A DNA stretch of 64,000 nucleotides from Macrostomum lignano (taxonomy: Eukaryota). The stretch's first letter is position 1, and every line of letters starts with the position of its first letter. The position numbers and the translations under genes are program-made. Under the pieces are notes generated by a model. The model ran no database searches. It was not told where the DNA came from and saw only the letters and a list, made by a program, of their open reading frames with translations. The stretch is from assembly GCA_002269645.1 (NCBI GenBank), contig NIVC01003436.1, forward strand, positions 33,826 to 97,825. The letters are read 5' to 3'. Shown here piece after piece: positions 25,423 through 56,381 of this stretch.

Positions 25423-25436
25423 TATATAGTTCTGGT

Positions 25437-32339: not shown

Positions 32340-32372
32340 GAGACAGAGACAGGCAGGCAGACAGACAGACAC

Positions 32373-32437
<65 letters not shown>

Positions 32438-32615
32438 GAGACACACAGGCAGACAGACAGACAGACAGACAGACAGACACACAGGCAGACAGACAGACAG
32501 ACAGACAGACACGCAGACAGTCTGACAGACAGACAGACAGACGGATACTAAAACAGACAGACAGACGGATACTAAAACAGACAGACAGACAGACAGACAG
32601 ACGGATACTAAAACG

Positions 32616-32646
<31 letters not shown>

Positions 32647-32960
32647 GGATACTAAAACAGACAGACAGACGGATACTAAAACAGACAGACAGACAGACAG
32701 ACGGATACTAAAACAGACAGACAGACAGACAGACGGATACTAAAACAGACAGACAGACGGATACTAAAACAGACAGACAGACAGACAGACGGATACTAAA
32801 ACAGACAGACAGACAGACAGACGGATACTAAAACAGACAGACAGACAGACAGACAGACAGACGGATACTAAAACAGACAGACAGACAGACAGACGGATAC
32901 TAAAACAGACAGACAGACAGACAGACAGACGGATACTAAAACAGACAGACAGACAGACAG
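32340..32960. repeat. (CAGA)n microsatellite interrupted by CGGATACTAAAA
   Basis: Direct reading of the sequence. Confidence 0.97.
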
Positions 32961-33106
32961 GCAAGGCAACAGCCGGCCAGCCAGCCCACTAACAGCGCAG
33001 CCGCTGCAGTTGCAGGCAGCTCCCATCGAATACCTCGGAGACCGAAGGCAGCTCCGCCACTCGCCAAAGTCGTTCGCCTAGCAGCTCAACGGCGGCGACG
33101 GCCAGC

Positions 33107-34025
33107 ATGAACTCCAGCGGCGAGGCTGGCGGCCTCCAGCGCTGCTTCTGGCGCAGCCACGCCGGCACGGTGCTGCCGGCCGAGATTCTGGGCAGCCAGC
33201 CCGGGCCCGGCCGCCAGAAGCTGCTGCTGCTCCGGCTGTCCGACACCGGCCAGCGCCGCCTGGCGCGAGCTCGGGACACCTGGCCGTGCCGGTCCGCGCC
33301 CGCCGGCGCCTGTCAGAAATGCCGGCAGAAGGCGGCAGAACCAGCAGCGCTGGTCTGTCAGGAGTGCCGCAATGTCTACCATCGGCACTGCGGCCTGCTG
33401 GACCCGGCGCAGACCGAAGGCTATCCTAGCGGCTTCTTCCGGTGCCGCAACTGCTGCTTCCGGTTGGCTGTCGGGCCGCTGGGCGCCGCTTCCGACGGTC
33501 GCGACGGCCGAATGCTGCGGGCGGTGAAGCGGCAGCTGGAGTACAGCGTGGCTCAGCTGAGCTGGCCCAGCGATCTGGAGAACTCGGACAATGTCTACTG
33601 CTACTGCGGCGGGCCCGGCAACACCGCCTACGGCATGCTGCGGTGCATCGCCTGCAAACAGCATTTCCACTTGGCCTGCTTGCAGGACCTGCCCGACTGG
33701 ATGCGGCATGGGCTGGTGCCCTGGGATCGGTGAGCTGTGTCTGATTGCAGATGCTTAATTTAGGGGGCTAGTCCTCTCAGATCCTTAGTTTGAGTAGCTA
33801 ATCCTCTCAGATCCCCAATTTGAGTAGCTAATCCTCTCAGATCCCCAGTTTGAGTAGCTAATCCTCTCAGATCCCCAGTTTGAGTAGCTAATCCTCTCAG
33901 ATCCCCAGTTTGAGTAGCTAATCTTCTCAGATCCCCAGTTTGAGTAGCTAATCTTCTCAGATCCCCAATTTGAGTAGCTAATCCTCTCAGATCCCCAGTT
34001 TGAGGAGCTAAGTCTGGTAGACAGC

Positions 34026-34065
<40 letters not shown>

Positions 34066-34078
34066 GAGACACACAGGC

Positions 34079-34113
<35 letters not shown>

Positions 34114-34508
34114 CAGGCAGACAAGCAGGCAGATGGACAAGCAGCCACCCATCCCGCTATCCACCAGTCTCCAAGCAGCCGCCCTCCACCTCCCCCCTCC
34201 GCCAGTTTCTACGCATTTCTGTGCGCCTGCTGCAACGAGTTCGACCCGCAGCCCGGCACGGAGTTCGTGCACCGCCTGCCGCTGCGCTGGCCGGACCTGG
34301 TGCACATGGGCCTGCTGAACCTGGCTGCCACCAGCGAGGGCTCCGGATTTCACTGGGCCCGGCACGTCACGCCCTGGCTGCGCTCCGTGTGGCACCGGCT
34401 GTACGTCTCCAACCTGCGTATGGCCGATCTGGAGACTCAGGTGCGGCTTCTGGCTGCATTGCGACTGGTCTGTCTGTGTCTGTCTGTGTCCGTCTGTGTA
34501 TGTCTGCC

Positions 34509-34547
<39 letters not shown>

Positions 34548-34700
34548 GTCCGTCTGTGTATGTCTGTCTGTCTGTGTCTGTCTGTCTGTCTGTCTTTCTC
34601 TCTGTCTGTCTGTCTCTCTGTCTGTCTGTCCGTCTGTGTATGTCTGTCTGTCTGTCTCTCTGTCTGTCTGTCCGTCTGTGTATGTCTGTCTGTCTTTCTC

Positions 34701-34741
<41 letters not shown>

Positions 34742-34944
34742 GTCCCTCTGTGTCCCTCTGTGTATGTCTGTCTGTCTGTGTCTGTCTGTCTGTGTCTCTG
34801 TCTGTCTGTGTCTGTCTGTCCGTCTGTGTATGTCTGTCTGTCTGTGTCTGTCTGTCTGTGTCTCTGTCTGTCTGTGTCTGTCTGTCCGTCTGTGTATGTC
34901 TGTCTGTCTTTCTGTCTGTCTTTCTCTCTGTCTGTCTGTCTGTA

Positions 34945-34987
<43 letters not shown>

Positions 34988-37879: not shown

Positions 37880-37944
37880 TTTTTAGCATATTTTTGGTTG
37901 TTTTTTTCGATGTAATAATCAGTACCTTTATTTGATTGAGGATT

Positions 37945-38845
37945 AGTGACTCTGATTGGTCAGGAGGAGCAATTAGGACTGTGCTACCCTCTGATTGGTC
38001 AGGAGGAGCAATATGGTCTGTGCTACCCTCTGATTGGTTAGGAGGAGCAATAAGGTCTGTGCTACTCTCTGATTGGTCAGGAGGAGCAATAAGGACTGTG
38101 CTACTCTCTGATTGGTCAGAAGGAGCAATAATGACTGTGCTACTCTCTGATTGGTCAGGAGGAGCAATAAGGACTGTGCTACTCTCTGATTGGTCAGGAG
38201 GAGCAATAGGGTCTGTGCTACTCTCTGATTGGTCAGGAGGAGCAATAAGGACTGTGCTACTCTCTGATTGGTCAGAAGGAGCAATAATGACTGTGCTACT
38301 CTCTGATTGGTCAGAAGGAGCAATAAGGACTGTGCTACTCTCTGATTGGTCAGGAGGAGCAATAATGACTGTGCTACTCTCTGATTGGTCAGGAGGAGCA
38401 ATAATGACTGTGCTACTCTCTGATTGGTCAGGAGGAGCAATAGGGTCTGTGCTACCCTATGATTGGTCAGGAGGAGCAATAAGGACTGTGCTACTCTCTG
38501 ATTGGTCAGGAGGAGCAATAAGGACTGTGCTACTCTCTGATTGGTCAGAAGGAGCAATAATGACTGTGCTACTCTCTGATTGGTCAGGAGGAGCAATAAG
38601 GACTGTGCTACTCTCTGATTGGTCAGGAGGAGCAATAGGGTCTGTGCTACTCTCTGATTGGTCAGGAGGAGCAATAAGGACTGTGCTACTCTCTGATTGG
38701 TCAGAAGGAGCAATAATGACTGTGCTACTCTCTGATTGGTCAGGAGGAGCAATAATGACTGTGCTACTCTCTGATTGGTCAGAAGGAGCAATAATGACTG
38801 TGCTACTCTCTGATTGGTCAGAAGGAGCAATAATGACTGTGCTGT
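37945..38845. repeat. 39-bp minisatellite (CTCTGATTGGTCAGGAGGAGCAATAAGGACTGTGCTACT)
   Basis: About 23 copies, starting about 65 bp after the Pcl stop. Confidence 0.97.
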
Positions 38846-39679
38846 GTCTAATTGGCTAGGAGTCTAACAGGTCAGATTAGCATCCGGGCATGCACGTTCT
38901 TGTTTTATAAGTGCCTTGTACTTGATGATACACTTTTGCGGCACGTTAGTTTGGTGAAATAATCATATTTAACTTATATATTTTATAGAGCTAAGAGAAT
39001 TCTAGCCATGCTAAACATTAAGCTTGTTTGCCTTTCGATTCCGATACTCCTAAACCCTTCAATCCGCCTATTACGAGCGCTGTGACTTGGAAAATTCATT
39101 CAGCCCCAGTCTGTCACTGTCCCGTCTGTCTTTTTAATAATACTCGTAGTACAACTGATGACTGCCTGTGCCACACGAATAACATTCTGCAGCAGATAGG
39201 CCTGCTGCTAGTGTACAATGAACTGCATCTTGTGCTTAGCCATTCAATGAACTTTTCTCTTCAATCTAAATGCACTGTAAGCCTTACTTGCATTTTTTGG
39301 TTTTGTGTCCTTTAGTAAAGTTTTCTGATCAGCTCTCGATGCTCTAATAAATTAAATCGTGTTTATGCGGACTGCTTTTGCCCTTGATTTGATTATACGT
39401 TATCCCTGATAACGACTGGCTGCCCCCACACAGTTGACTCTTCAGCCTTCTATTTCCTAGCTGATTTTTACAGCAAGCAATTGTCCTTTGTCTTCTGTTG
39501 CCAAGGAGAATTGCGTTTTCTGAAGTTTTCACTGCGTGCTTTGTGCGCTTCACTGTATACTACTGGTCTGTAGAGTTCATCTGAGTAGTCAGTGCTGCTT
39601 TTGTTATTGCGGTGCCGGGCCCTGCTTTACATTCGGTGATAGCAATACGCGGCACTCTTAACCCGTTTTGAAATAGTCT

Positions 39680-40015
39680 TTAGCGATGGAATGTACATTA
39701 TGCAGCCAATCAAGTAGACTGATTAGCGATGGAATGTACATTGTGCAGCCAATCAAGTAGACTGATTAGCGATGGAATGTACATTGTGCAGCCAATCAAA
39801 TAGACTGATTGGCGATGGAATGTACATTGTGCAGCCAATCAAGTAGACTGACTAGCGATGGAATGTACATTGTGCAGCCAATCAAGTAGACGGATTATAT
39901 AGTGATTGAATGTACATTGTGCAGCCAATCAGGTAGACTGATTAGCAATTGAATGTACATTGTGCTGCCAATCAAATAGACGGACTGTATAGTGATTGAA
40001 TGTACATTGTGCGCT
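39680..40015. repeat. 43-bp minisatellite (TAGCGATGGAATGTACATTGTGCAGCCAATCAAGTAGACTGAT)
   Basis: About 7.5 copies. Confidence 0.95.
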
Positions 40016-40424
40016 GCTTGACAGCCTAGTTTATGATTTATCAAAAATTAGCTCTTGTAGTCTCTTTTTGTTAAAAGCCAAATACCTGTCCTGTCCCGGA
40101 GTTGGCTCCAGGCGCTCTCCTTTGTTATTGTCCGATGGGCCTCAGACTGCGTCTCACTTTAGCTGTATGCTCTGTGTACTGATCCTGGATGCTATTTGGA
40201 ATTGCACCTTTCCCATCATAGCCTGCTTATTCGAATGCACGCTTATCATTAAAGCTCTGCCATTTATTGTTACTGTTATATTTTCATAAGGTCTTCGGCC
40301 ATTTGTTAGCCCCGCTTCGGGCTAATTCTGAGAAAAGCCAAGAAACTCTAAAAAAATAGACTGAAGTTGAGTTCCAAATTCGAGTTTATTTTGCCGTGTC
40401 AGTATGGGAGGCTGTGAAGGATTT

Positions 40425-42245
40425 GGAGATGCAGAGTGATCTGGGGGGATGCTGAGGGATATGGGGGGATGCTGAGGGATATGGGGGGATGCTGAGGGAT
40501 ATGGTGGATCCTGAGGGATATGGGGGATGCTGAGGGATATGGGGGGATGCTGAGGGATATGGGGGATGCTGAGGGATCTGGGGGGATGCTGAGGGATATG
40601 GGGGGATGCTGAGGGATATTGGGGGATGCTGAGGGATATGGTGGATCCTGAGGGATATGGGGATGCTGAGGGATATGGGGGGATGCTGAGGGATATGGGG
40701 GGATGCTGAGGGATATGGGGGGATGCTGAGGGATCTGGGGGGATGCTGAGGGATATGGGGGATGCTGAGGGATATGGGGGGATGCTGAGGGATATGGTGG
40801 ATCCTGAGGGATATGGGGGATGCTGAGGGATATGGGGGGATGCTGAGGGATATGGGGGATGCTGAGGGATATGGGGGGATGCTGAGGGATCTGGGGGGAT
40901 GCTGAGGGATATGGGGGGATGCTGAGGGATATGGGGGGATGCTGAGGGATATGGTGGATCCTGAGGGATATGGGGGATGCTGAGGGATATGGGGGATGCT
41001 GAGGGATATGGGGGATGCTGAGGGATATGGGGGATGCTGAGGGATATGGTGGATCCTGAGGGATATGGGGGATGCTGAGGGATATGGGGGATGCTGAGGG
41101 ATATGGGGGATCCTGAGGGATATGGGGGATGCTGAGGGATATGGGGGATGCTGAGGGATATGGGGGATGCTGAGGGATATGGGGGATGCTGAGGGATATG
41201 GGGGATGCTAGGGATCTGGGGGATGCTGAGGGATCTGGGGGGAGGGGGATGCTGAGGGATATGGGGATACTGAGGGATATGGGGGATACTGAGGGATATG
41301 GGGGATGCTGAGGGATATGGGGGATGCTGAGGGATCTGGGGGATACTGAGGGATATGGGGGATGCAGAGGGATATGGTGGATCCTGAGGGATATGGGGGA
41401 TGCTGAGGGATATGGGGGATGCTGAGGGATATGGGGGATGCTGAGGGATATGGGGGATGCTAGGGATCTGGGGGATGCTGAGGGATCTGGGGGGAGGGGA
41501 TGCTGAGGGATATGGGGATACTGAGGGATATGGGGGATACTGAGGGATATGGGGGATGCTGAGGGATATGGGGGATGCTGAGGGATCTGGGGGATACTGA
41601 GGGATATGGGGGATGCAGAGTGATCTGGGGGTGTTGAGGGATCTGGGGGATGCTGAGGGATATGGGGGGGTGCTGAGGGATATGGGGGATCCTGAGGGAT
41701 ATGGGGGATGCTGAGGGATATGGGGGATCCTGAGGGATATGGGGGATGCTGAGGGATATGGGGGATGCTGAGGGATATGGGGGATGCTGAGGGATATGGG
41801 GGATGCTAGGGATCTGGGGGATGCTGAGGGATCTGGGGGGAGGGGGATGCTGAGGGATATGGGGGATACTGAGGGATATGGGGGATGCTGAGGGATATGG
41901 GGGATGCTGAGGGATATGGGGGATGCTGAGGGATATGGGGGATGCTAGGGATCTGGGGGATGCTGAGGGATCTGGGGGGGGGATGCTGAGGGATATGGGG
42001 GATACTGAGGGATATGGGGGATGCTGAGGGATATGGGGGATGCTGAGGGATATGGGGGATGCTGAGGGATATGGGGGATGCTGAGGGATATGGGGGATGC
42101 TGAGGGATATGGGGGATGCTGAGGGATCTGGGGGATACTGAGGGATATGGGGGATGCTGAGGGATCTGGGGGATGCTGAGGGATATGGGGGATGCTGAGG
42201 GATCTGGGGGATGCTATGGATTGGGGGGGGGGATGCTGAGTGTGA
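40425..42245. repeat. 18-19-bp G-rich minisatellite (GGGGGATGCTGAGGGATAT), about 1.8 kb
   Basis: Variable G-run length; strongly strand-asymmetric. Confidence 0.97.
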
Positions 42246-43554
42246 TGCCGAGCTCTAGGCACTGCAGAGACTAATTACAATATGCGTACCGTGACTAACC
42301 GATATTATGTACGTGTTACTGGATTTCCCGGGCATTCTGCAGGTCGGTCCGGGGCTGCCAAAGTGGCGGCACCTCTTCGAAGGCTGCATGCACCGAATGG
42401 TGTTCGTCTTCGAGCAGTTCCGCAACGGGCCAGGGCGAGTGGCCTGTGATAACTTCAATAACTGAGGCAGTAATGTTGGAGTGAGAAATTGCTCACTTGA
42501 GAGCTTGGCTGGCTATTTATTAGTTTGCAAAGTGATGGTGGGTGCAGAGCAGGCGCGCATAGCTTGAGGGTGAATACAAGTTTATTCAAGTCACTAAGCC
42601 AGTCGAAAAAATAGCGATCAGACGCGCCACTGGCTGGTCTAAAATTCAGTTCATGCAACCGGTTACAAAGTTCATCGTGGGACTAATTAACAACTCAGGA
42701 CGTTACACTCGCGAATAGTAGAAATTCTAGAAAAGGCCGACTGCTTTTACATGTAGCTGTTTGTATAATTTTAAAAATAATTACACTATAGCGCGAAAAA
42801 TTAATAACTGTTAAGTAGTCCTTGATCACTAAGTCACAGTGCGGCCTGCTCTGGATTCATTCACGCTCGGGACATGCCCCCCAAGCTGATGTACCGACCT
42901 TGTGCAATGCACTGTCGCCGTCAAGTTCGCCATATCTAGTCAGCCTGTCCCAGCCGAACACTGCTACTCCTATCCAGCGCGTACATAGGACTAGGCCCCT
43001 TTGTTGCCAGCACAGCGACTCCTTCCGCTACCCCGTACCCCGACCACCCGGCCCGCCGCGGGGCCCATCTCTGTTGCTGGACACCCTCCGGCCTCGTGGC
43101 TCCGCGTCCGCTTGGCCTGAAACTGCAAAGCCTGTATCCGCAAAGGCCTCTTCCTCGGCTGGCCTTCGCTTTCGTAATGGAGCTGTAAACAAATTTACTG
43201 AGCTTCTCCGCCTGTAACAACATAATGACGTGGCGGCTATCCATGAAACAAAGCTTCAGCCTCATGACCTGCTTCTCAACTCTCCTGGCTATATTGCAGG
43301 TTCGCGCTGATCGCCGGCCAGACACCCTGGGGAGCGGTCTCCTCTTCCTGGTTCCTCTTCCTCACGCAAATTAAGGTGACTTAGACGGCACACGCACGCA
43401 TATGATAATTGATCTTACTGTAGAACGTATTGGCACAGTAAAAATCAATGGATTGTAAAATTGATTGAAAGAATACCGGCAGCGTCGAAAGTATAAATGC
43501 TGTGGCTCATGAGGTGTTGCTGAGATGCCAATGCGCGGTCAATTTAAATGGATC

Positions 43555-44196
43555 TATGAGAATTTCCCGCAGGAATTTTTCCCGCCGAGCTTTTCCCGCA
43601 CGAGATTTTCCCACAGCGAGTTTTTACCGCAGCGAGAGTTTCCCGCAGGAAATTTCCCCGTCGAGATTTTCCTGCCGAGCTTTTACCGCCGAGATTTTCC
43701 CGCACGAATTTTCCCCGCACAGACTTTTTCCAGCAGAAAGATTTTCCCGCAAGAAATTTCTCGTGATTGCCTGTTTACCTTCCTACCTTCCTACCTGTCT
43801 GTCTGTCTGCCTGCCTGCAAAATAATCAAGCTTGCTGATTCGATTAATTGCCAAAATGGTGACGCAAAAAGTACAAAAGGTCTTGACTGGGTAGTTTTGG
43901 TTAATACAGAGGCTTCGAATTAAGAAAGAAATTATAAAAAGGAAAGCTATTTAGCAGAGACGCGATTTTCTTTGATAAATTCGACACAGGCAGCCAGCCA
44001 GGCAGGCAGGCAGACAGACAGACAGGTAGGAAGGTAGGAAGGTAAACAGGCGCAATCACGAGAAATTTCTTGCGGGAAAATCTTTCTGCTGGAAAAAGTC
44101 TGTGCGGTGAAAATTCGTGCGGGAAAATCTCGACGGTAAAAGCTCGGCAGGAAAATCTCGACGGGGAAATTTCCTGCGGGAAACTCTCGCTGCGGT
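43555..44196. mobile_element. Foldback/MITE-like element with TTTTCCCGC subrepeats; right arm truncated
   Basis: About 43630-43820 is the reverse complement of about 43990-44196. The left arm has extra subrepeats with no partner on the right. Confidence 0.75.
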
Positions 44197-46805
44197 TTCG
44201 GCCTCATCAACAAGCCTCCGCCTGCCTTCACGCATTCTTCCAACTACCGTTCTGCTACTGACCATGCCGAACAGGTTGACAAGAAACTCTCCGAAGAGCT
44301 CCGCCTTGGCCGCTTAAAACCCGCTAGCGGACGCGTCATGGTGAATGCTATCGGCGCGATCCCTAAGTCTGACGGCAGCGTTCGGATAATTCACGATCTG
44401 TCCAGTCCTTCCGGCTCTTCGGTCAACGACAGCTATCAGCAGGAGCGGAGTCTGAGGTTCTCCTCCGTGCAGGATCTGCTGCGTCACATCCGGCCCGGCT
44501 CGTTTATCGGCAAGGTCGATCTGAAGCAGGCCTACCGCTCTGTCGGCATCCACCCGGACGATCAGGCGTTGACGGGCCTCAGCTGGCATTTCGCAGCTGA
44601 CACCGAATCCTCGGTGTCCATCGACACCCGGCTGCCATTCGGTGCCCGGGCCTCTTGCGAGATCTTTCAGTGTCTCTCAGCCGCCATTCATCGCCACATG
44701 CTTAGGCAAGGCTTCCAAGCTACGGTCAACTACCTGGACGACTGGGCGGTTGCCGGCGACTCACAGGAAGCCGCTGAATGCGCTTACGCCTACCTGGTGC
44801 ACCTCCTGCAAGACCTGGGCTTCACCATCAACTAAAGCAAGTCCACGGCCCCAACGCAGCGGATGGTCTTCCTCGGCGTTCAAATCGACACAAATGACGG
44901 AACACTGTCGCTGCCCATGGACAAGGCCGCCAGCACCAGGGATTTGCTGAAGGACTGCCTCTCCCGTGAGATCGTCAAGCTCAAGCAGCTGGAGAGGCTG
45001 GCCGGGAAGCTGTGCTGGTTGGGCCAGATCAACAAACTGCTGCGTCCATTTCTTCGCCCGCTTTTTGACCTCATCAGCGACGGTCGAGATCTTCGGCTGC
45101 CTCAAGAAGCTCGCGATCTGCTGCAATGGTGGCTGCAGGCAGTGGATTCGCTGCCACCTACGCCGCTGCATCCGCGCTTTCATCAGTTGGTAGCCATCGA
45201 GTCCGACAGCAGCTCCGAGGGCGCCGCTGGCATCGTAAGCGGCACCCGCTTCAACGACTGGGTGTACTTCAGCTGGGAGCACGACTTTGAGTCAGAGTTC
45301 AAAGACCTCCACATCAACTACAAGGAGGCCCTGGCTCCGATCGTCACCATCCTGCGCTTCCACGAGCAGCTCAGCAACAGCCGGGTGGTGGTCTACTCCG
45401 ACAGCACGGCTGCAGTCGGCATGATCAACAAGCTGTCCTGCAGGCATCCATCGCTTATTCGAATCTACCAGACGGTGGCCCTCCTTTGCCTCGAGTCTGG
45501 GATCCAGCTGCAGGCGTTTCACCTTCCCGGTCACATGCAGCTCACTAGCGACTCGGCGTCTCGGATGCTGAGCTCAAAGCATGAGCTCGTGAACTTTTGC
45601 TGTCGCCACTATGGCTCTCTTTGTGTCTGTCCTACTGAATTTGTCTCGCACACCATCTCTGCCGCGTCCTGCACCACTCTTCTTTCACAGGTCGCAGCCG
45701 CGCTCCCCACCGCCACACCGTGTCCGTGCCCATCCTGTGCCGCCTGTCGCTCGCACCCAGCACCCGGAAGTCGTATGCCAGCCACCTGCGGCTCTGGAGG
45801 GAGTTTTGTCGACAGCAGCGGGTCTTCCCCACGGCCGCATCGAAGTCAGACGTCTGCAACTTCACCGCCTTCCTATTGGAGCGAGGCTGCGCCTCCTACT
45901 CAAGCGTGCAAACCAAGCCTCAGCGCAGTGTCCTTCATCCACAGGGCGACGGCAGCACCGGACCCCACCAAGGACAACGCCCGACTGGCTCTCGTCTGCC
46001 GCGGAGCCCGACGCCTACTAAGCAGGCTGCCACGCAGGGCAGAGCCACTGCAGCCGCATCATCTCCGCCTGCTCTGAAACAGCCCTCTGCTTCAGCAATT
46101 GCTGCCCCGGCGCCTCTTCGTGGCCTTCAAGGCTGCGCTGCTGGTTGCCTGGTGGGGCGTCCTTCGTCTGGGCGAGCTTCTTCCGTCTACCGCTGGCGCT
46201 GCTTTGCGCCGCGGCGCGCTGTCGACCTGCCCCGGCGGCCTCCGCCTGACCATCGGCAAGTCCAAGACAAACCAGTTCAAGGAGCGTCAGCTGCTGGTGT
46301 TCCTTCCGCAATGCACCGACTGCCCACCGATCTGCCCGGTCTCTGCCCTCGCCACTCATCTGCATGAGAACCAAGTTGTCGAGCCGCACCAGCCTCTCTT
46401 CGCTGTCCTGGACGCCCGCAGAGTCCCGTTGGCTGCCTCGACCTTCATCCGCCTGCTCAAGCGGGGCCTGTCGATCTGCGGCATCCCTGAGGAAAACTTC
46501 TCTGGCCACAGTCTGCGCAGGGGCGGAGCCAGCGCCGCCTTACAGGGTGGCCTCTCCGTGGCCGACATCTGCTGCTTTGGTGACTGGCGCTCCGACTCCG
46601 TCTTCCGCTATTTCTCGGACGATGCAGCTTTTGCCTACAGGCGCTCCGCCGTCCAGCAGATTGCTGCTTCTATTAATTATCACTAACTTCCCCCGCTTCT
46701 TTTTTTTCGGGGTTGGGGTCGCCTTCCCCACCTCGTCGCTGCTTTGTGCTCGCTGCCAACCCGCCGCCTTTGCCTTCCTTTTGCTGCTTGTGGGGTTGCG
46801 GGTTA
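44194..46805 (+). mobile_element. 5'-truncated Ngaro/DIRS-type tyrosine-recombinase retrotransposon (RT, RNase H, YR), recently inactivated
   Basis: RT: GF...IGAIPKSDGSVRIIHDLS...KVDLKQAYR...RLPFG...NYLDD (YLDD at 44731). RNase H: ESDSS...HINYKEALA...YSDS...SDSASR. YR: LAPSTRKSY...LRLGELL...KSKTNQ...CPV...FSGHSLRRGGA...GDWRSDSVFRY. Lesions: TAA at 44833-44835, +1 shift near 45916, TGA at 46075-46077. No methyltransferase ORF between RH and YR, which favours Ngaro-type. Confidence 0.9.
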
Positions 46806-47672
46806 ATGCCATTTACCACTCTAGCGAGGCACTCTAGTGACCAGGAGTATTTGAGCAGGCCTGATGCCATTTGTCACTCTAGTGAGGCACTCTAGTGACC
46901 AGGAGTATTTGAGCAGGAATGATGCCATTTGCCACTCTAGTGAGGCACTCTAGTGACCAGGAGTATTTGAGCAGGCCTGATGCCATTTGCCACTCTAGTG
47001 AGGCACTCTAGTGACCAGGAGTATTTGAGCAGGCCTGATGCCATTTACCACTCTAGCGAGGCACTCTAGTGACCAGGAGTATTTGAGCAGGCCTGATGCC
47101 ATTTACCACTCTAGCGAGGCACTCTAGTGACCAGGAGTATTTGAGCAGGCCTGATGCCATTTGCCACTCTAGTGAGGCACTCTAGTGACCAGGAGTATTT
47201 GAGCAGGAATGATGCCATTTGCCACTCTAGTGAGGCACTCTAGTGACCAGGAGTATTTGAGCAGGCCTGATGCCATTTGTCACTCTAGTGAGGCACTCTA
47301 GTGACCAGGAGTTTTTGAGCAGGAATGATGCCATTTACCACTCTAGCGAGGCACTCTAGTGACCAGGAGTTTTTGAGCAGGAATGATGCCATTTACCACT
47401 CTAGCGAGGCACTCTAGTGACCAGGAGTATTTGAGCAGGCCTGATGCCATTTGCCACTCTAGTGAGGCACTCTAGTGACCAGGAGTATTTGAGCAGGAAT
47501 GATGCCATTTGCCACTCTAGTGAGGCACTCTAGTGACCAGGAGTATTTGAGCAGGCCTGATGCCATTTGCCACTCTAGTGAGGCACTCTAGTGACCAGGA
47601 GTATTTGAGCAGGAATGATGCCATTTGCCACTGTAGTGAGGCACTCTAGTGACCAGGAGTATTTGAGCAGGC
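46805..47672. repeat. 58-bp minisatellite (TGATGCCATTTGCCACTCTAGTGAGGCACTCTAGTGACCAGGAGTATTTGAGCAGGCC)
   Basis: About 15 copies; abuts the 3' end of the YR element. Confidence 0.96.
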
Positions 47673-47993
47673 AGTCAAATAGGCCATAGCCAACGGTTGA
47701 GCCACTGCTTAGGACTTCAATCGGGAGTCCGCGGCAACAACCAGTAAGAGGGCCTTTTGTACCTGTGATTAGCGACGGTATCGGTCTACTAAACTACTGA
47801 GGGTAATATGGGGGAACATTGTTGTTAGGAAAGTCTTATTGAGTATTAATAAGTCGGCGTTTATTGAGAGTCTTGAGAAAGATCGCAAGAGAAGGTTAAC
47901 ACTGAATTTAGCTCTGGCGCAGCTCAAACAAAACTTATATGTACAGGTTAGGAGTCGGAGACCATTAGACATATAATTACGAAGTTTTAGATC

Positions 47994-48578
47994 TGGTGCC
48001 AGTGGGCGAGGCAGTGGCGGCGGACGGCAGCCTGCGCGGCAGCCAACGGCACGGGCGCGGTGCCTTGCGCCAGCGTGGAGCCTCGCTTGGCGATCTCGTC
48101 CACGGCCTCGTTGCCGGGGATTCTCGCGTGGCCAGGCACCCAGCTGGCCTCCCCGACCTCGCGGGGGGACCTGCCGGAGGCCCGGAGAGCCGCGGCGGAG
48201 CAGACGCTTGCCGCCCTGCCGCCCGCCGGCACCGTGGTCTGGACCGACGGAGTGGTCTGGACCGACGGAGCGGTGAAGGACGGCATCCTGGACGGCGGCA
48301 GCGGCATCCTGGTCGAGCCCAACACCACGCTGTGCGTCGCTGCTGGCCACGTGACGTCCAGCTTCCACGCCGAGTTAGTGGCCATCGCTGAGGCCCTTCG
48401 GTGGGTGCTCGCGGCCCCGGACCCGGCAGAGCTGTCGGTCCGCATCTGCTCTGACTCCCTGAGCGCGCTTAGCGCGCTCGCGTCCGGCCCCAGGTCGACG
48501 GGCGCCACGATGATCGACGCCGTCTGGGCCAGCCTCGCCGACCTCGTCGCGGCCCGGGGAACCTCGGTCCACCTGCAG
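47994..48578. mobile_element. Rearranged RNase H fragment of an RH-bearing non-LTR retrotransposon, with internal inversion
   Basis: Plus strand 48141-48578 reads TVVWTDG...SSFHAELVAIAEAL...ICSDSLSAL...SVHLQ. Minus strand 48142-47994 reads WVPGHARIPGNEAVDEIAK, the natural continuation of HLQ. Confidence 0.85.
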
Positions 48579-48702
48579 GTGTCCCGAGCTCGCGCCAGGC
48601 GGCGCTGGCCGGCAGCACCGTGCCGGTGTGGCTGCACCAGAAGCAGAGCTGGAGGCCGCCTGCCTCGCCGCTGGAGTTCATGCTGGTATTTGACGGGAGC
48701 TG

Positions 48703-48751
<49 letters not shown>

Positions 48752-48756
48752 TAGTT

Positions 48757-48803
<47 letters not shown>

Positions 48804-48808
48804 TAGTT

Positions 48809-48863
<55 letters not shown>

Positions 48864-48905
48864 GCCTGTCTGTCTGTCTGTCTGTCTTTCTGTCTTTGTG
48901 TCTGT
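48576..48905 (-). pseudogene. Inverted, internally deleted partial copy of the Pcl 5' region with its upstream (CAGA)n tract
   Basis: Minus strand reads CAGCTCCCGTCAAATACC|AGCATGAACTCCAGCGGCGAGGC...GTGCTGCCGGCC|AGCGCCGCCTGGCGCGAGCTCGGGACACCTG, matching 33017-33280 with deletions. The (CTGT)n tract carries TTAGT interruptions like the reverse complement of the 32340-32960 tract. Confidence 0.88.
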
Positions 48906-48907
48906 GT

Positions 48908-49000
48908 ATCAGGGATGCAGCCATTCAGTGAAACTGAAGGATCAGGGATGCAGCCATTCAGTGCAACTGAAGGATCAGGGATGCAGCCATTCAGTGCAAA
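48908..49000. repeat. 33-bp tandem repeat, about 2.7 copies
   Basis: ATCAGGGATGCAGCCATTCAGTGMAACTGAAGG. Confidence 0.85.
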
Positions 49001-49438
49001 TATCAGAGGCACCGTTATGAAAAGTCTTGCATGAAGTTTGTCTCAAAATCGCATAAGAAAATGTTAACAAGAAAATCTTCAGATGAAAAGAAATTGTTGA
49101 TCTATTAAAATGCAGGCATTTTTCGCTTTCTTTCAATAATAAAGTTTCATAGGCCCCAGGATGCCTTGACAGATCCGTAGGTCAAATAAAAGTACACACT
49201 CAACTCCACTTGCTCCTTGCTAGGAGGGGTTTAGCCATAGACTATGCGCCAGACAGACAGTCCTCGAGGTCGATCTGAAGCTAAAAGTCCCAGCCCTGTC
49301 CGTTCTCGGACTTTCAGCCACAGAGAGCCACTGCGTTTCCCTGCACTACATAAGCGAGCGCCCTGAGCCAAGTGGGGCGGCATCTTCACAACTTACCTAA
49401 AACCAAACCCGATTTCAGCAAAATTACTTCAAGCTAGC

Positions 49439-52400
49439 ATGAGGACATTAATCTTCATCGCCATCTCGATCATCGTTGTTGCGGGTAAGCATCGGTTCTG
49501 TGCTGATCTGTGTGTTTATCAATTAGGCACTTGGATTGAGAAACTGCATTCTGTGCTGATCTGTGTGTTTATCAATTAGGCACTCAGATTGAGAAACTCC
49601 ATTCTGTGCAGATCTGTGTGTTTATCAATTAGGCACTCAGATTGAGAAACTCCACTCTGTGCAGATCTGTGTGTTTATCAATTAGGCACTCAGATTGAGA
49701 AACTCCATTCTGTGCAGATCTGTGTGTTTATCAATTAGGCACTCAGATTGAGAAACTCCATCCTGTGCTGATCTGTGTGTTTATCAATTAGGCACTCAGA
49801 TTGAGAAACTCCACTCTGTGCAGATCTGTGTGTTTATCAATTAGGCACTCGGATTGAGAAACTCCATTTTGTGCAGATCTGTGTGTTTATCAATTAGGCA
49901 CTCAGATTGAGAAACTCCATTTTGTGCAGATCTGTGTGTTTATCAATTAGGCACTCAGATTGAGAAACTCCATCCTGTGCTGATCTGTGTGTTTATCAAT
50001 TAGGCACTCAGATTGAGAAACTCCATTTTGTGCAGATCTGTGTGTTTATCAATTAGGCACTCAGATTGAGAAACTCCATTCTGTGCAGATCTGTGTGTTT
50101 ATCAATTAGGCACTCTGATTGAGAAACTCCATTCTGTGCTGATCTGTGTGTTTATCAATTAGGCACTCAGATTGAGAAACTCCATTCTGTGCAGATCTGT
50201 GTGTTTATCAATTAGGCACTCAGATTGAGAAACTCCATTCTGTGCAGATCTGTGTGTTTATCAATTAGGCACTCAGATTGAGAAACTCCATTCTGTGCTA
50301 ATCTGTGTGTTTATCAATTATGCACTCAGATTGAGAAACTCCATTCTGTGCTAATCTGTGTGTTTATCAATTATGCACTCAGATTGAGAAACTCCATTCT
50401 GTGCTAATCTGTGTGTTTATCAATTAGGCACTCAGATTGAGGAAACTCCATCCTGTGCTAATCTGTGTGTTTATCAATTATGCACTCAGATTGAGAAACT
50501 CCATTCTGTGCTAATCTGTGTGTTTATCAATTATGCACTCAGATTGAGAAACTCCATTCTGTGCTAATCTGTGTGTTTATCAATTAGGCACTCAGATTGA
50601 GGAAACTCCATCCTGTGCTAATCTGTGTGTTTATCAATTAGGCACTCAGATTGAGGAAACTCCATCCTGTGCTAATCTGTGTGTTTATCAATTATGCACT
50701 CAGATTAAGAAACTCCATCCCATGGTTAGGGGGTCCAGTGAGAAATTTTTTTTTCAAAACTCAAATTTTTAACTATGCCATGTTGTAGCCCTGGATGTTA
50801 TGAGTGAAATGATACTAGACTTTTGAAAATTGATCGAGTAGTAAAAAAATTATGAAGTTTTTCGTTTCAAAAAAATGGTGTTTTTTTCCTATCTCAAATA
50901 CACTAAAAACTGTGCCATTTTTAGGCAAAAAAGCATGTTTTTTGCAGTTAAATGTCTGTAACTTTTTTATTTCATAACCGATTTTAGTGTTTTAGGTGTT
51001 ATTTTGTAGATTTTTGTTACCATAACATTTTCTGATAATTTTGTACATATACACTGTTCTATATATGCAGATATCTGGGGATTAAGACAGAAAAAGGGAA
51101 GAAAATTTTTTTTCTAGAGTACCACTTTTTGGCTTTATCATGGTATTCTTTCTATTAACCTTAATTTGTATTACCTTCATGTTAAAGTAATACTTGTATA
51201 CTATAATTAGTAAGATTTTTGACTTTCTACTGTAAGTAGTATGCAAATAGTTGACCATTATTTCCATGAAAATGGGTCTTCTAAAGTACCACACTGGTTG
51301 TCAAAAATCGATGTAGCTCCTGACAATCTTAATCTTCTATCTTCATGCTGAAGTCATTAAAAACTTTTTTGTAGTCCATCTGACAATTGTAATGAATCAA
51401 TGCTTTACTAAGTAATATGTTACTAAATCATGTACTTTCATGTTTGAAAAGGCCATGCCCGAATTCAGCAATTGAATCTACCTTTACAGTTTACCTGGAT
51501 TATTTGATTCATTTACTTGTTCACTGTGTCCACTTTTCAGCACAATAGCTTTCCGTTGTAATCCAGTCAATTTGTCTGCTACCAATTCATCTGCAGTCAG
51601 CTTGTCAGCAAATATCTGAATGAGAATTTCGTCTGCTATGCTGGCCTTCTCATTGTACTATGAGTCTACTACAGTACTACAACTGTAGCTACTACAGTCA
51701 AGCCAGTCAGGCATGATCGAGACAATGTTACAGGGTGGGTTTCAGGGCTTTGACACGAATGTATAGGTCGCATCATCGGCAGTGTCAAGGGTGTCAGCTG
51801 CATCAGCCGGCAGGCAGTCAATAAAATGCGAGTGCGTGCCTTTCCTCTCCAGTATTACAGTGCCTACAGCATAGCAGCATCAGCACCAGCTGCGGGCAAT
51901 ACGAATCGGCTTGGTTGACATGGCCTGGCAGCTGGAGACTGGAGTCGCCAACTGCGCAACAGTTTGCTAAGACGGACACCAGTTCGGCGATAAAGTGTCG
52001 CATTGATGACTCGCTCGTAGCTAATCTAACAATCTTGGGGGCAGTACACTACACAGCGTGATTACATTGTATATGTACATGTACATTATGAGAGTATGAC
52101 ACTCGATTCGTCTGCTCCCGTTTTCATTCCCAGTCAGTTTGTCTGCCAGAAGCTGAATTGACTGAGAACCCTTTTAGTCAGCTCAGCTTTTACTCAGCTG
52201 CTCCATTTGAGTGCTTTAATACTGTATTAATTAGCTTGGCAGAATGTATCAGTCTGTCTATATACACTGAACCAGACGTACTTTATAACTTTATAACCTG
52301 TGGCTGTGGCAGGCAGTAACGAAAGTGAAGGAAAAAAACGCAGGACCTGTTGAGGTCGAAGGTGCGCAAGAAAGCTGCTGGCAAGCAGAGTCCCTGGGCT

Positions 52401-54005: not shown

Positions 54006-55609
54006 AACTGGTGCAGGATTTAAAACATTAATTGACAATAATAAATTCTCAATGCTGATTATTAGTACTACCATATATCCCCATCAAAACTAAACAATAT
54101 TTTTACTAGTAATCAAAATAAAAAATAAACAAAGACAGAACCGACCAATCTAATGTTCTAATGTTGTTAAAATAAAGTAAAAAATTGACTAAATTTTACT
54201 TGTCTTAAAAAGCTCTGCAAGCTTTGTACTTGATGCCAGTAGATGAACTGGCTAAAATGTACTTGTAAATAAAGTGAATCTTACATTTTGAATCCAAATA
54301 ACTTCCACAATTGAGTTTATAGAAGCAGGATTGAGCCTGATCAAGGATTTCTCCATAACTATAACCTGGAATCAGGGACTACTAAATGACTTGAGTATTG
54401 AGTAGTCCCTGCGCGGAATGTAGATGAGAAACCTGTGTGTGGGGCGTACCAACTGAGGCCTACCTACGAGTGCAATTCTGGCCCAGTCTTCCACACCAAA
54501 GCAGCCAAGTTTTCCTGCCTAATTCTGACTAAATATTAATTTTATAGTTTCAGTACATAGCTTCCATGTTATGTAGTGCATGCGCCCTTGTCGGTTGGCG
54601 GGGCGCGTTGCACTTTGGGGCTGGCTAGGGGGGTTGGCGGGCGTGGCAGGGTCTGGCCGCCGGCCGGGCTTTGCGCGTGCCCCTCCCCCCCTAGACGGGG
54701 TTTTGATTGGCTGGCCGGCGCGGCCAGTCTCTATTTTTTGTGTAGTTTGTTTGTTTTAGTGGGCTTAGCCGGGGGGCCGTCTGCCCCACGGTTTGGTTGT
54801 TATTTATAGTGCGGCTCTGGGTTTTGCCCACGCGCTGCGTGCTTTTTGTGTTTCCCTTTGTGTTTCCTTGCCAAGAAACACAAGAGCCTAATTGAGACGA
54901 GTCTTTGAGAATTGAGAAGTCAGAAACTGTGCTTGAGACCAACGATAAAAATCAATAAACGTACGAACGGCAATTCGGCCACTGGTAAGCCACCTGCTGC
55001 TTGAGTTCATTCTTTTCTGGGGAGCTTGTTAGGCTGAGTTCTTGCCAGAGCGTCATAACGCCGGGAGAGCATATATAGCTTATTGTAGTACAGTACCGGC
55101 TACTCTATAGAGTGTACAACCTACAGTATCGAGGTTAGAAGCACTCGAGAGTGTCATCACACCTCGAGCCGCAGCGTGAACTCTGAGTGTCACAACACCA
55201 GAGGGATCGAACTATTATCGCAGAGCGTCGTCACGCCTGCTCGTATCCATAAAAGTACATACAGAGCGTCACTACGCCTGTTTCATGACGTATAGTATAT
55301 ATTGTACTCGGAACTGGGCACCCAAACCGACTCGGGTTACGACAGTTACCAGCGTACATTGATTTTGGATCATTTTTTGCTATTGAAGCTTATTAGTTAA
55401 TGTGATCTTAGACATTTAGTATAGGTGGATGACGGCTATGTAAATTCTCATAAATAAATCAGTCGTTGCCGAATATTAATTCTAGACTTTAGCGAAAAAT
55501 GGGAGCTGAGCGTTGATGAGGCGCCAGTTTGAGCATTGATTTAAGCTATTTGGGTCAGGGGTTCGAGTTGCTGTATGCGGTCTAAATGGATTTCAATCTA
55601 CACTAATCA

Positions 55610-55750
55610 ACAGCATCACTCATCGCCAGCATCACTGATCCCCAGCATCACTAATCCCCACGATCACTAATCCCTAGCATCACTGATCTCCAGCATCACT
55701 AATCGCCAGCTTCACTCATCCCCAGCATCACTAATCCTCATCCTCACTAT
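55610..55750. repeat. 16-bp minisatellite, reverse-complement relative of the Pcl intron 3 repeat
   Basis: CCCAGCATCACTAATC is the reverse complement of GATTAGTGATGCTGGG. Confidence 0.85.
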
Positions 55751-56381
55751 TCCTGAATTATAATTTACTGCTCCATTCAGGCTCTGTGAGTGCGAGTAAA
55801 AAAACAATTTTCCCGGCCATTACTCTCAGTAGTTGAGTAGGCCGGTACCATCGCTAATCACAGGCTCAAAAGCTTGGTGCCGTGGACTCCCGATTGAAGT
55901 CCTAAGCTGTGGCTTATGCCTAACATGCAGGTCCCCCGCAGCATACCTCCCAGTCCCCGAAGTTCCCGAATCATTTTCAGCAATGCGGGACGAAAAGGAC
56001 GGATAACATATGTAAAAAGAGCGGAGGAGATGATAAGCCAGCAAATGTATGAGTTGGGAGCATTTATGCCATCTCTAATTATATTTGCAAGCGGAAAAGG
56101 TTATAGTGGCTTAATAACTTACTCGGGCACACACAAATGTAGATGGAAATGCAACTCTGCTGCTCACTGAAGAGCACCATTTTATACGCAAAGAAAAACA
56201 CTCTTTCTCATTTGACCTTTGTCGAGCTGGCTAAAACGGAATACGAGTAAGTCTGCAGCAGTTCTAATTGCACATGGAGTATTCCAGTCCATCTGCTGAC
56301 AGAGGTTCTCCTACAGAAAACTGAAGTGCAGATAAACTCGCTGAGTACTTGGGTCCTGAGCACACAGTGCAGCTATTCAAG

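What the first reader, a model, noticed from the sequence alone, without database searches (positions are those of the whole stretch)
47994..48905. Chimera: LINE RNase H with twin-priming inversion fused to a serially deleted copy of the Pcl 5' end
Seen: reading the minus strand gives (CAGA)n, then a Pcl fragment, then the RNase H N-half inverted (beginning exactly at the HLQ end), then the RNase H C-half in sense (beginning at WVPGH, the next residues). The Pcl piece and the inverted piece overlap by 3 nt (CAG, 48576-48578). The Pcl copy has three deletions of similar size (about 56, 69 and 70 bp), each bounded by microhomology (CAG, CC, CCGGCC), and none is a GT-AG intron. There is also an 18-bp in-frame duplication of VVWTDG. 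Known: flank + antisense(p to q) + sense(p onward) is the geometry of twin-primed LINE insertion. Inference: either a LINE RT switched templates onto Pcl pre-mRNA and skipped GC-rich stretches, or microhomology-mediated template switching copied a locus 15 kb away. An antisense Pcl fragment near its parent could also be a source of dsRNA or small RNA against a PRC2 cofactor.
Basis: partly seen in the sequence, partly recalled or inferred. Interest (0 to 1): 0.72.

Follow-up and report, generated by a model that had tools for sequence, protein, structure and literature searches.

The report
LINE and Pcl fragment repair patchwork
A 0.9-kb dead patchwork in an animal genome joins an internally flipped piece of a jumping-gene (LINE) enzyme domain to a gapped copy of the start of the Polycomb-like gene 15 kb away; it looks like a real scar of untidy break repair or retrotransposition, not a new kind of element.

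Summary
The description holds. On the minus strand, 48905 to 47988 reads: (CAGA)n; a 127-nt copy of the 5' end of the neighbouring PHF1/MTF2/Pcl-like gene in three blocks (gaps 57, 69 and 70 bp); the N-terminal 438 nt of a LINE RNase H region, inverted; then the next 155 nt in sense. The flip lies exactly between codons Q and W. These are contiguous (LQWVPGH) in 8 protein relatives, and 59 metagenome loci match through the same motif.

- The inverted-then-sense order is the twin-priming geometry.
- The sense arm is not a LINE 3' end. Relatives continue for about 130-170 more codons, a short 3' UTR and an (AAG)n-type tail. The window's homology stops at 47988, with no tail and no target-site duplication.
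- The Pcl copy reaches at least 160 nt into the upstream microsatellite.
- The skipped blocks are neither GC-richer nor more structured than the retained ones.
- The donor is only 15 kb away.

My best reading is a one-off break-repair scar. LINE cDNA was primed from both ends of a break (non-classical, 3'-truncated). The upstream end first copied the nearby Pcl 5' region by low-processivity, microhomology-guided synthesis. An in-place inversion, capture of Pcl RNA, or several separate events remain possible. There is no sign of function. Interest is modest.

The parts
48703..48905 (-). (CAGA)n array with two AACTAAGA variant units (48811-48797 and 48759-48745). Probably part of the copied Pcl upstream region.
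   Evidence: TRF. The in-phase xACT|AAxA variant occurs only here and in the parent array at 32347-32960 (13 copies of CGGATACTAAAA). It is absent from the three other (CAGA)n arrays in the window.
48687..48702 (-). Pcl copy block a, matching parent 33017-33032 (5' leader), 14/16 identical.
   Evidence: Global alignment.
48613..48686 (-). Pcl copy block b, matching parent 33102-33175 (5 nt of leader, the ATG and the first 23 codons), 70/74 identical.
   Evidence: The gap to block a is 69 bp with CC microhomology.
48576..48612 (-). Pcl copy block c, matching parent 33246-33282, 37/37 identical. The last 3 nt (48576-48578) are shared with the LINE arm.
   Evidence: BLAST E 1.4e-11. The gap to block b is 70 bp with CCGGCC microhomology.
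48141..48578 (+). LINE ORF2 fragment Y..X: the RT-RNase H linker plus the RNase H N-half, ending ...VHLQ. It is inverted relative to the other LINE arm and has an open frame of 146 codons.
   Evidence: Translation. Pfam RNase_H. 73% nt identity to L001:404-821. tblastn of P0001-P0007.
48234..48269 (+). Exact 18-bp tandem duplication (VVWTDG twice) inside the N-half.
   Evidence: the repeat finder D5. Absent from L001.
47988..48142 (-). LINE ORF2 fragment X+1..Z: the RNase H C-half, WVPGH...HWHQ. It is 3'-truncated relative to relatives.
   Evidence: Translation. 86% nt identity to L001:818-976; homology stops at 47988. Relatives continue.
48563..48588 (.). Junction J1 (Pcl | inverted LINE). 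It is a 26-nt quasi-palindrome with CTGCAG at its core and a 3-nt overlap.
   Evidence: the repeat finder I1. 12/16 same-sense homeology. Simulation P about 0.002. Hairpin energy is unremarkable.
48135..48150 (.). Junction J2 (start of the inverted LINE arm | start of the sense LINE arm). CAGCTG core, 2-nt overlap (48141-48142).
   Evidence: BLAST end points versus L001.
32347..33282 (+). Donor: the (CAGA)n/CGGATACTAAAA array, leader and first 176 nt of the coding sequence of the intact Pcl/PHF1-like gene.

Best explanation
The locus is a dead, one-off repair scar, not a working element. A break in this satellite-rich stretch was patched with two kinds of borrowed sequence.

1. LINE sequence. 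LINE cDNA was made from both sides of the break on one LINE RNA. The lower end primed internally at Z and copied back to X+1. The upper end primed at the CAG of codon Q and copied X back to Y. The two cDNAs were then joined through a 2-nt overlap. This gives the twin-priming order with zero gap. Because priming did not start at the element's tail, there is no 3' end, tail or target-site duplication. That is the non-classical, endonuclease-independent form of LINE insertion.

2. Pcl sequence. Before it primed on the LINE RNA, the upper end had copied the upstream microsatellite and 5' end of the Pcl-like gene 15 kb away, from DNA. This synthesis was short and poorly processive, most simply started by homology between (CAGA)n arrays, and it skipped forward three times.

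Shown: the anatomy, the exact adjacency of the two LINE arms in element coordinates, the 3' truncation, the short overlaps, the shared microsatellite variant and the intact donor.

Inferred: that all this was a single event, the order of steps, that the LINE template was RNA, and that the Pcl template was DNA.
For: - Exact adjacency of the arms (LQ|WVPGH) in 8 relatives, with 59 further metagenome loci matching through that motif. About 46% of human L1 5' inversions have the two cDNA ends within 20 bp of each other (PMC12016303).
- 3' truncation, no tail and no target-site duplication. These are the criteria used for non-classical L1 insertions, one of which was also truncated/inverted, and which carry extra non-L1 DNA (PMC1920257).
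- No other piece of this LINE lies in the 64-kb window. The LINE template was therefore not a local DNA copy.
- The Pcl donor is 15 kb away and intact. The copy extends into the array, sharing the xACT|AAxA variant.
- All three large gaps lie in the 270-nt Pcl span and none in the 593-nt LINE span. If gaps were spread evenly, (270/863)^3 = 0.03 (my arithmetic). The gaps therefore belong to how the Pcl copy was made, or to an earlier time.
- L1 cDNA intermediates are known to recombine with DNA breaks, and more so where there is homology (PMC13526784 abstract).
- The copy is 95% identical to the parent, not 100%, and 4 of 6 differences are at parental CpGs. It is an aged genomic copy, not a mis-join of reads.
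Against: - Only one haplotype is available, and neither the pre-event sequence nor a consensus of this LINE family in this genome is known.
- An in-place inversion of a colinear Pcl-LINE fragment gives the same sequence with one filler base.
- Human endonuclease-independent insertions rarely show inversions: 2 of 21 showed internal rearrangement of the L1 segment, one of them a simple truncation/inversion (PMC1920257).
- The 3' truncation could be a later deletion in a very unstable, satellite-rich region.
- Gap 1 looks like a GC-AG intron, which would point to an RNA origin for the Pcl piece.
- The same-sense 12/16 homeology at J1 (P about 0.002) has no role in this model.
- The similar sizes of the three gaps are unexplained.
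Confidence: 0.4

Rival explanations
1. Several separate events. (i) A partial, inverted DNA duplicate of the Pcl upstream array and 5' end arose and lost three blocks. (ii) A LINE inserted into it by ordinary twin priming. (iii) A later deletion removed the LINE 3' part, its tail, the target-site duplication and the rest of the Pcl copy.
For: - The twin-priming geometry and junction overlaps are met.
- The region is packed with satellites and rearranged repeats, so later deletions are plausible.
- The Pcl copy shows ageing: 4.7% divergence and CpG loss.
- All large gaps lie in the Pcl part, consistent with that part being older than the LINE part.
Against: - It needs three or more independent events that end exactly at the present junctions.
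- No trace of Pcl sequence lies beyond the LINE.
- Three gaps of 57-70 bp within 270 bp is a dense cluster for independent decay.
Confidence: 0.25
2. Capture of Pcl RNA by the LINE reverse transcriptase. The cDNA copied LINE RNA from Z to Y, then switched onto a (possibly nascent, read-through) Pcl transcript and ran to its 5' part. This would make a colinear, same-sense Pcl-LINE chimera like the known L1-mRNA chimeras. The Y..X segment was inverted afterwards.
For: - Pcl and the non-inverted LINE arm are in the same orientation, and the Pcl piece is first-exon sequence. This matches L1-mRNA chimeras (PMC13174262).
- Gap 1 is bounded CAG|GCAAGG...CACTAAC...GGCAG|CT. Only 9e-6 of random 45-90-nt intervals carry such signals (the features were chosen after seeing the data).
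- Pcl just past its breakpoint reads CTGGCC, the same bases as in the start of the N-half (CAG CTGGCC).
- The 12/16 same-sense homeology at the breakpoints would favour a sense-to-sense switch.
Against: - The predicted splice product differs from the copy by 2 nt, and the putative intron has no pyrimidine tract. The gene's real intron at 33733-34207 has one.
- Gaps 2 and 3 cannot be introns in any placement. They are not GC-richer or more structured than retained blocks.
- The copy includes at least 160 nt of upstream microsatellite, which would have to be transcribed.
- A retrocopy landing 15 kb from its parent is very unlikely unless the RNA was tethered in cis.
- It still needs a separate inversion and a separate 3' truncation, and there is no tail or target-site duplication.
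Confidence: 0.15
3. Purely DNA-level replicative template switching (MMBIR/FoSTeS type). One nascent strand copied the Pcl array and 5' region with three forward slips, then one strand of a LINE DNA copy from X to Y, then the other strand from X+1 to Z, and then resumed on the original template.
For: - There are five or six joins with 0-6 nt microhomology, mixed orientations, and an intact donor in cis 15 kb away.
- These are the usual marks of such events (own knowledge: Lee et al. 2007; Hastings et al. 2009).
Against: - There is no LINE DNA donor in the window.
- Two independent landings on opposite strands at adjacent nucleotides (X and X+1) would be a coincidence of roughly 1 in several hundred, unless a resident LINE fragment was already inverted.
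Confidence: 0.12
4. Assembly artefact: reads from the Pcl locus and from LINE copies were mis-joined.
For: The region is flanked by long tandem arrays that are hard to assemble. No independent assembly holds these ORFs or junction J1.
Against: - The Pcl copy differs from the parent in the same window by 6 substitutions and 3 gaps. It is therefore not the parent's reads.
- The junctions are clean, with short overlaps, and there is no duplicated fold-back.
Confidence: 0.05

Closest known systems
Twin-primed (5'-inverted) LINE-1 insertions (Ostertag & Kazazian 2001; surveyed in PMC12016303)
   Same: The inverted upstream segment is followed by the sense downstream segment. The two are adjacent in element coordinates, and the junctions have short overlaps.
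   Different: Here the sense segment does not reach the element's 3' end. There is no tail and no target-site duplication. The element is an RNase H-bearing non-L1-type LINE with (AAG)n-type tails in its relatives.
Non-classical / endonuclease-independent L1 insertions at double-strand breaks (Sen et al. 2007, PMC1920257)
   Same: 3' truncation, no tail, no target-site duplication, microhomology at the ends, extra non-LINE DNA at the site, and an occasional truncation/inversion.
   Different: The pre-insertion state is unknown here, so break repair is inferred rather than shown. The extra DNA is a gapped copy of a neighbouring gene's 5' end.
L1-mRNA and L1-small-RNA chimeric insertions (Law & Burns 2026, PMC13174262)
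   Same: First-exon host sequence lies at the 5' side of a truncated LINE, in the same sense as the non-inverted LINE arm.
   Different: In the known cases the whole chimera is flanked by a target-site duplication and has a tail. Junctions often sit at splice sites, and the parents are usually unlinked. Here the host piece ends mid-exon, has two non-intronic gaps, includes upstream microsatellite, abuts an inverted arm and lies 15 kb from its parent.
Microhomology-mediated template switching (FoSTeS/MMBIR) and ectopic synthesis-dependent repair (own knowledge)
   Same: A patchwork of short templated segments with 0-6 nt microhomology, mixed orientation, and an intact donor nearby.
   Different: One of the templates is a retrotransposon with no local DNA copy, and its two arms meet at adjacent nucleotides. 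That points to an RNA/cDNA intermediate or to an in-place inversion.

Membership tests
Non-LTR retrotransposon (LINE) ORF2 fragment | RNase H1-type domain whose relatives lie in ORF2 with APE endonuclease and RT | tested here: met
   Pfam RNase_H 50.5 bits for the rejoined halves. L004 has a 1212-aa ORF with Exo_endo_phos + RVT_1 + RNase_H. L005 has APE + RT followed by the RNase H ORF.
Classical twin-primed LINE insertion | An inverted 5' segment and a sense 3' segment that adjoin in element coordinates | tested here: met
   The arms meet at Q|W. Relatives are colinear across that point.
Classical twin-primed LINE insertion | The sense segment runs to the element's 3' end and tail | tested here: not met
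   Homology to L001 stops at 47988. Relatives carry about 130-170 more codons, a 3' UTR and an (AAG)n/(GAAA)n tail. Neither follows in the window.
Classical twin-primed LINE insertion | Target-site duplication flanking the whole insertion | tested here: not met
   No direct repeat abuts the ends. The only candidate, 47887-47900 versus 49055-49068, lies about 90-150 nt away from them. The test is weakened by the missing 3' end and by the arrays.
Non-classical (endonuclease-independent) LINE insertion | 3' truncation, no tail and no target-site duplication | tested here: met
   Criteria as in PMC1920257.
Non-classical (endonuclease-independent) LINE insertion | Verified pre-insertion (empty or deleted) site in a relative, and an atypical endonuclease site | not testable with these tools
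   No related genome or haplotype is available. Exact-protein and junction look-ups found nothing.
LINE-mRNA chimeric retrocopy (RT template switch or trans-splicing) | The host part is processed RNA: it starts at the transcription start and its introns are removed | tested here: inconclusive
   Gap 1 is GC-AG-like but is 2 nt off the predicted splice product. Gaps 2 and 3 are not introns. The copy includes upstream microsatellite.
LINE-mRNA chimeric retrocopy (RT template switch or trans-splicing) | The host part is in the same sense as the adjoining LINE, and the whole is bounded by a target-site duplication and a tail | tested here: not met
   The adjoining LINE arm is antisense to Pcl. Only the distal arm is in the same sense. 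There is no target-site duplication or tail.
MMBIR/FoSTeS-type complex rearrangement | Several templated segments joined by microhomology, with donors intact and nearby | tested here: inconclusive
   Met for Pcl: donor 15 kb away, overlaps of 0, 2, 6 and 3 nt. Not met for the LINE: no donor in the window.
Polycomb-like (PHF1/MTF2/PHF19/Pcl) gene as parent | PHD1-PHD2 followed by the extended-homology region | tested here: met
   PDB 5xfn PHF1 at E 1.4e-19 over residues 54-197, and Drosophila Pcl 5oqd at E 3.4e-10. The next exon begins FYAFLCACC. The Tudor part itself was not aligned.

The most novel reading that the evidence does not exclude
The Pcl piece was copied from a spliced, still-tethered (read-through) Pcl transcript by a LINE reverse transcriptase during repair of a break 15 kb downstream of the gene. 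That would be RNA-templated repair in cis by a retrotransposon enzyme. The resulting antisense 5' fragment (37- and 25-nt perfect matches plus a (TCTG)n tract) could then pair with Pcl RNA and feed small-RNA control of a PRC2 cofactor.
Probability: 0.07. Interest if true: 0.6.

Novelty: new member of a known kind. Interest (0 to 1): 0.3.

Why it matters
Taken at face value, this is a clean natural example, outside mammals and outside L1, of a LINE fragment with twin-priming geometry but without the 3' end. It is fused to a gapped copy of a neighbouring gene. Such scars record how retrotransposon cDNA and local DNA are used to patch breaks, and how gene fragments become scattered. It does not change what is known about LINEs or about Polycomb-like genes. 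Nothing suggests that it is expressed or selected.

Tried and rejected
- Hairpin skipping as the cause of the three gaps. The deleted blocks fold no better than dinucleotide shuffles (z from -0.8 to +0.2).
- 'GC-rich stretches skipped'. The deleted blocks are not GC-richer than the retained ones.
- GT-AG or GC-AG introns for gaps 2 and 3. No placement within the microhomology gives splice dinucleotides.
- The rest of the LINE elsewhere in the window (RT, zinc-knuckle region, tail). tblastn with 8 relatives and two full ORF2s finds only 47993-48578. The RT fragments at 2695-3456 and 19363-20358 are not detected by those queries.
- Target-site duplication. None abuts the ends.
- Independent copies of the locus. 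The exact ORF products are not on record, and junction J1 is absent from JGI metagenomes.
- Organism or orthologue via Pcl exon 1. There were no hits in the 5.8-billion-protein search.
- The lower-flank repeat (47700-47826, similar to 55800-55914) as a tRNA-derived SINE. There is no tRNA and no Rfam match.
- J1 and J2 quasi-palindromes as stable hairpins. Their energies are unremarkable (z -1.0 and -0.2).
- A colinear ancestor with a 6-nt CTGGCC overlap. This is weakened because relative L001 shows CAGCTG as native LINE sequence at Y, which puts the overlap out of register.

Full report
**What is there.** Reading the minus strand from 48905 to 47988 gives four parts:
- a (CAGA)n array (48905-48703);
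- 127 nt copied from the 5' end of the gene that starts at 33107 on the plus strand;
- 438 nt that encode, on the opposite (plus) strand, LASPTSRGDL...GTSVHLQ;
- 155 nt that encode WVPGHARIPGNEAVDEIAKRG...HWHQ on the minus strand.

The two coding pieces are the two halves of one RNase H domain. Separately they score 21.2 and 19.1 bits against Pfam RNase_H. Joined, they score 50.5 bits over profile positions 5-140 of 141.

**The parent gene.** It is a Polycomb-like gene. Exon 1 matches the PHF1 Tudor-PHD1-PHD2 structures at E 1.4e-19, and Drosophila Pcl at E 3.4e-10. After a GT-AG intron (33733-34207), the next exon begins FYAFLCACC, the start of the extended-homology region.

**The LINE part.**
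- A search of 5.8 billion proteins gave eight relatives, all from ENA metagenome contigs. All have LQWVPGH or its equivalent as one uninterrupted stretch.
- By tblastn, their matches to the window break at adjacent residues: P0001 158|159, P0003 140|141, P0004 43|44, P0005 84|85.
- A further 59 loci from JGI metagenomes were picked up through the [LI][QVH]WVPGHA[GRD] motif, and many of their tblastn matches run across residues on both sides of the split.
- The relatives sit in true non-LTR elements. L004 has a 1212-aa ORF with APE endonuclease, RT and RNase H. L005 has APE + RT followed by the RNase H ORF.
- At DNA level the closest relative, L001, is colinear. L001:404-821 matches window 48141-48578 on the plus strand (73%), and L001:818-976 matches 48147-47988 on the minus strand (86%).
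- The 18-bp tandem duplication (48234-48269) is exact and absent from L001.

- The sense arm is not the 3' end of the element. After ...WHQ, four of the eight relatives (P0004, P0005, P0007, P0008) continue for about 130-170 residues, and two of these carry a zinc-binding zf-RVT motif. P0001 continues for 38 residues and its contig L001 carries further ORF2-like coding sequence.
- In L002, L004 and L005 the ORF is followed by 40-100 nt of 3' UTR and an (AAG)n or (GAAA)n tail.
- In the window, homology to L001 stops at 47988. What follows is unrelated AT-rich sequence with no tail.
- No other piece of this LINE exists anywhere in the 64 kb.
- No direct repeat abuts the ends.
- The hallmarks that define a classical twin-primed insertion are an intact 3' end, a tail and a target-site duplication (PMC12016303; PMC1920257). 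None of these is met. Only the geometry is.

**The Pcl part.**
- The copy has three colinear blocks: parent 33017-33032, 33102-33175 and 33246-33282. They are separated by gaps of 57, 69 and 70 bp.
- It is 121/127 identical to the parent. Four of the six differences lie at parental CpG sites. This is what an unconstrained, ageing copy would show. It also excludes a simple mis-join of reads from the parent.
- Gap 2 is bounded by CC and gap 3 by CCGGCC. No placement of either gap gives splice dinucleotides.
- Gap 1 has no microhomology in the best alignment.
- The deleted blocks are not GC-richer than the retained ones: 0.68, 0.68 and 0.74 against 0.50, 0.73 and 0.81. They also do not fold better than shuffles. 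'Skipping of GC-rich stretches' is therefore not supported.
- All three large gaps fall in the 270-nt Pcl span and none in the 593-nt LINE span. This suggests the gaps belong to how or when the Pcl copy was made, not to general decay of the locus. Under evenly spread gaps, (270/863)^3 is about 0.03 (my arithmetic).

**The copy reaches into the microsatellite.**
- The parent array (32347-32960) is a higher-order repeat of (CAGA)3-7 CGGATACTAAAA, 13 times.
- The array next to the copy is (CAGA)14 AACTAAGA (CAGA)11 AACTAAGA (CAGA)11.
- The variant xACT|AAxA lies in the same phase in both arrays. It is absent from the three other (CAGA)n arrays of the window.
- The duplicated segment therefore most likely includes at least 160 nt of the upstream array.
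- Caveat: I could compare only five arrays. A genome-wide family of such arrays is not excluded.

**A feature in favour of an RNA origin.**
- Gap 1 is bounded CAG|GCAAGG ... CACTAAC ... GGCAG|CT. That is a good GC-AG donor, a branch-point-like motif and an AG.
- Only 9e-6 of random 45-90-nt intervals in GC-rich parts of the window carry this combination. I chose the features after seeing them.
- Against it: the predicted splice product differs from the copy by 2 nt. There is no pyrimidine tract, whereas the gene's real intron has a strong one. The other two gaps, of the same size class, are certainly not introns.

**Junctions.**
- J1 (Pcl | inverted arm) has a 3-nt overlap at 48576-48578.
- J2 (start of the inverted arm | start of the sense arm) has a 2-nt overlap at 48141-48142.
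- J1 is a 26-nt quasi-palindrome. The reason is that the last 16 nt of the Pcl piece and the 16 nt of the LINE that end 3 nt before its break are 12/16 identical in the same sense.
- This is the best match of that 16-mer anywhere in the LINE fragment. Random junctions reach it with P about 0.002.
- As a hairpin it is not unusually stable.
- I have no model in which this homeology is used to form an inverted junction. It would naturally guide a sense-to-sense switch between Pcl and the LINE. I record it as unexplained.

**Mechanism.** The inverted-then-sense order with zero gap arises naturally in two ways. One is two cDNAs primed on one RNA from both sides of a break (twin priming). The other is an in-place inversion of a colinear fragment. 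It is an unlikely coincidence for two independent template switches onto opposite strands of a DNA copy.

Several facts bear on the choice:
- There is no LINE DNA donor in the window.
- The 3' truncation, the lack of a tail and target-site duplication, and the extra non-LINE DNA match the criteria for non-classical, endonuclease-independent insertions at breaks. Human examples include a truncated/inverted one (PMC1920257).
- L1 cDNA intermediates are now known to recombine with DNA breaks (PMC13526784).

For the Pcl piece, three points favour copying from the neighbouring DNA:
- The strand that continues into the inverted arm is Pcl sense, so it was a primer or pre-existing DNA, not first-strand cDNA.
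- The copy includes upstream microsatellite.
- The donor is only 15 kb away.

The synthesis was most simply seeded by (CAGA)n homology, with three forward slips. I put this single-event reading at about 0.4. The rivals are separate events with a later deletion (0.25), capture of a Pcl transcript followed by inversion (0.15), pure DNA-level template switching (0.12) and an assembly artefact (0.05).

[quoted passage not shown] Twin priming puts them in opposite senses (PMC13174262). Here Pcl is antisense to the adjoining arm and in the same sense as the distal arm, so neither simple class fits. The locus is best filed as a new instance of LINE-associated complex break repair. It is not a classical twin-primed insertion and not a classical LINE-mRNA chimera.

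**Function.** Nothing indicates any.
- The longest perfect complementarity to Pcl RNA is 37 nt, and the next longest is 25 nt.
- The Pcl introns already contain (TCTG)n tracts.
- The ORFs that cross the junctions are by-products of GC-rich sequence.
- The small-RNA idea is untested and, in my view, unlikely.

**Verdict.** This is an ordinary kind of thing in an unusually legible state. Interest 0.3.

Noticed in passing
window 44338-46686 (+), with inverted 195-bp repeats at 43626-43818 and 44002-44196: A DIRS-like retroelement lies 1.3 kb from the chimera. It has an RT ORF (Pfam RVT_1, E 5.9e-10), a 404-aa ORF with no Pfam match and a weak tyrosine-recombinase ORF (Phage_integrase, E 0.004, below Pfam's cut-off). 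A 98%-identical inverted repeat pair lies just upstream.
   Followed up: partly
window 31324-50718: There is an extreme density of tandem arrays, many inside introns of the Pcl-like gene. Unit sizes are 32, 4, 30, 4, 66 (TCTG higher-order), 16 (65 copies), 39 (23 copies), 43, 19 (93 copies), 58 (15 copies), 33 and 53 bp (23 copies). The chimera sits between the 58-bp and 53-bp arrays.
   Followed up: partly
window 55552-55914 versus 36483-36673 and 47700-47826: An inverted copy of the 16-bp intronic satellite of the Pcl gene (55601-55753) lies next to a 77% inverted copy of the chimera's lower flank (55800-55914 similar to 47700-47826). This is a small dispersed repeat with no tRNA or Rfam match. 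It may hint at further shuffling between these loci.
   Followed up: partly
window 48563-48588: The Pcl and LINE breakpoints share 12/16 nt in the same sense, which makes junction J1 a quasi-palindrome. Simulated P is about 0.002. None of the models considered accounts for it.
   Followed up: yes
window 32961-33019: A possible 59-nt GC-AG intron (CAG|GCAAGG...CACTAAC...GGCAG|CT) lies in the Pcl leader. If real, the 614-bp (CAGA)n array would lie in a 5' UTR exon. There is also an acceptor-like site, ttctacag|TTCGAG, at 32275/32276.
   Followed up: partly
window 2666-3461, 18913-19712, 51800-52027: A dispersed repeat encoding an RT fragment (Pfam RVT_1). Two copies are inverted relative to each other at 83% identity, and there is a weaker third copy. 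The LINE ORF2 queries did not detect it, so it is a different retroelement family.
   Followed up: no
window 8118-9434 (+): An uninterrupted 438-aa ORF for a rhodopsin-family GPCR (7tm_1 E 4e-8; Srw-type E 4.8e-6). Together with the Pcl homologue, this suggests an animal genome.
   Followed up: no
L002:737-800, L004 (minus strand below 7104), L005:4386-4452: Relatives of this LINE end in a short 3' UTR followed by (AAG)n or (GAAA)n tails. RNase H lies upstream of a C-terminal zinc-binding (zf-RVT) region.
   Followed up: partly
window 21719-21942 versus 25210-25429: A 224-bp inverted repeat pair at 95% identity, 3.3 kb apart, in an AT-rich stretch. It could be the ends of a DNA transposon or a foldback element.
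   Followed up: no
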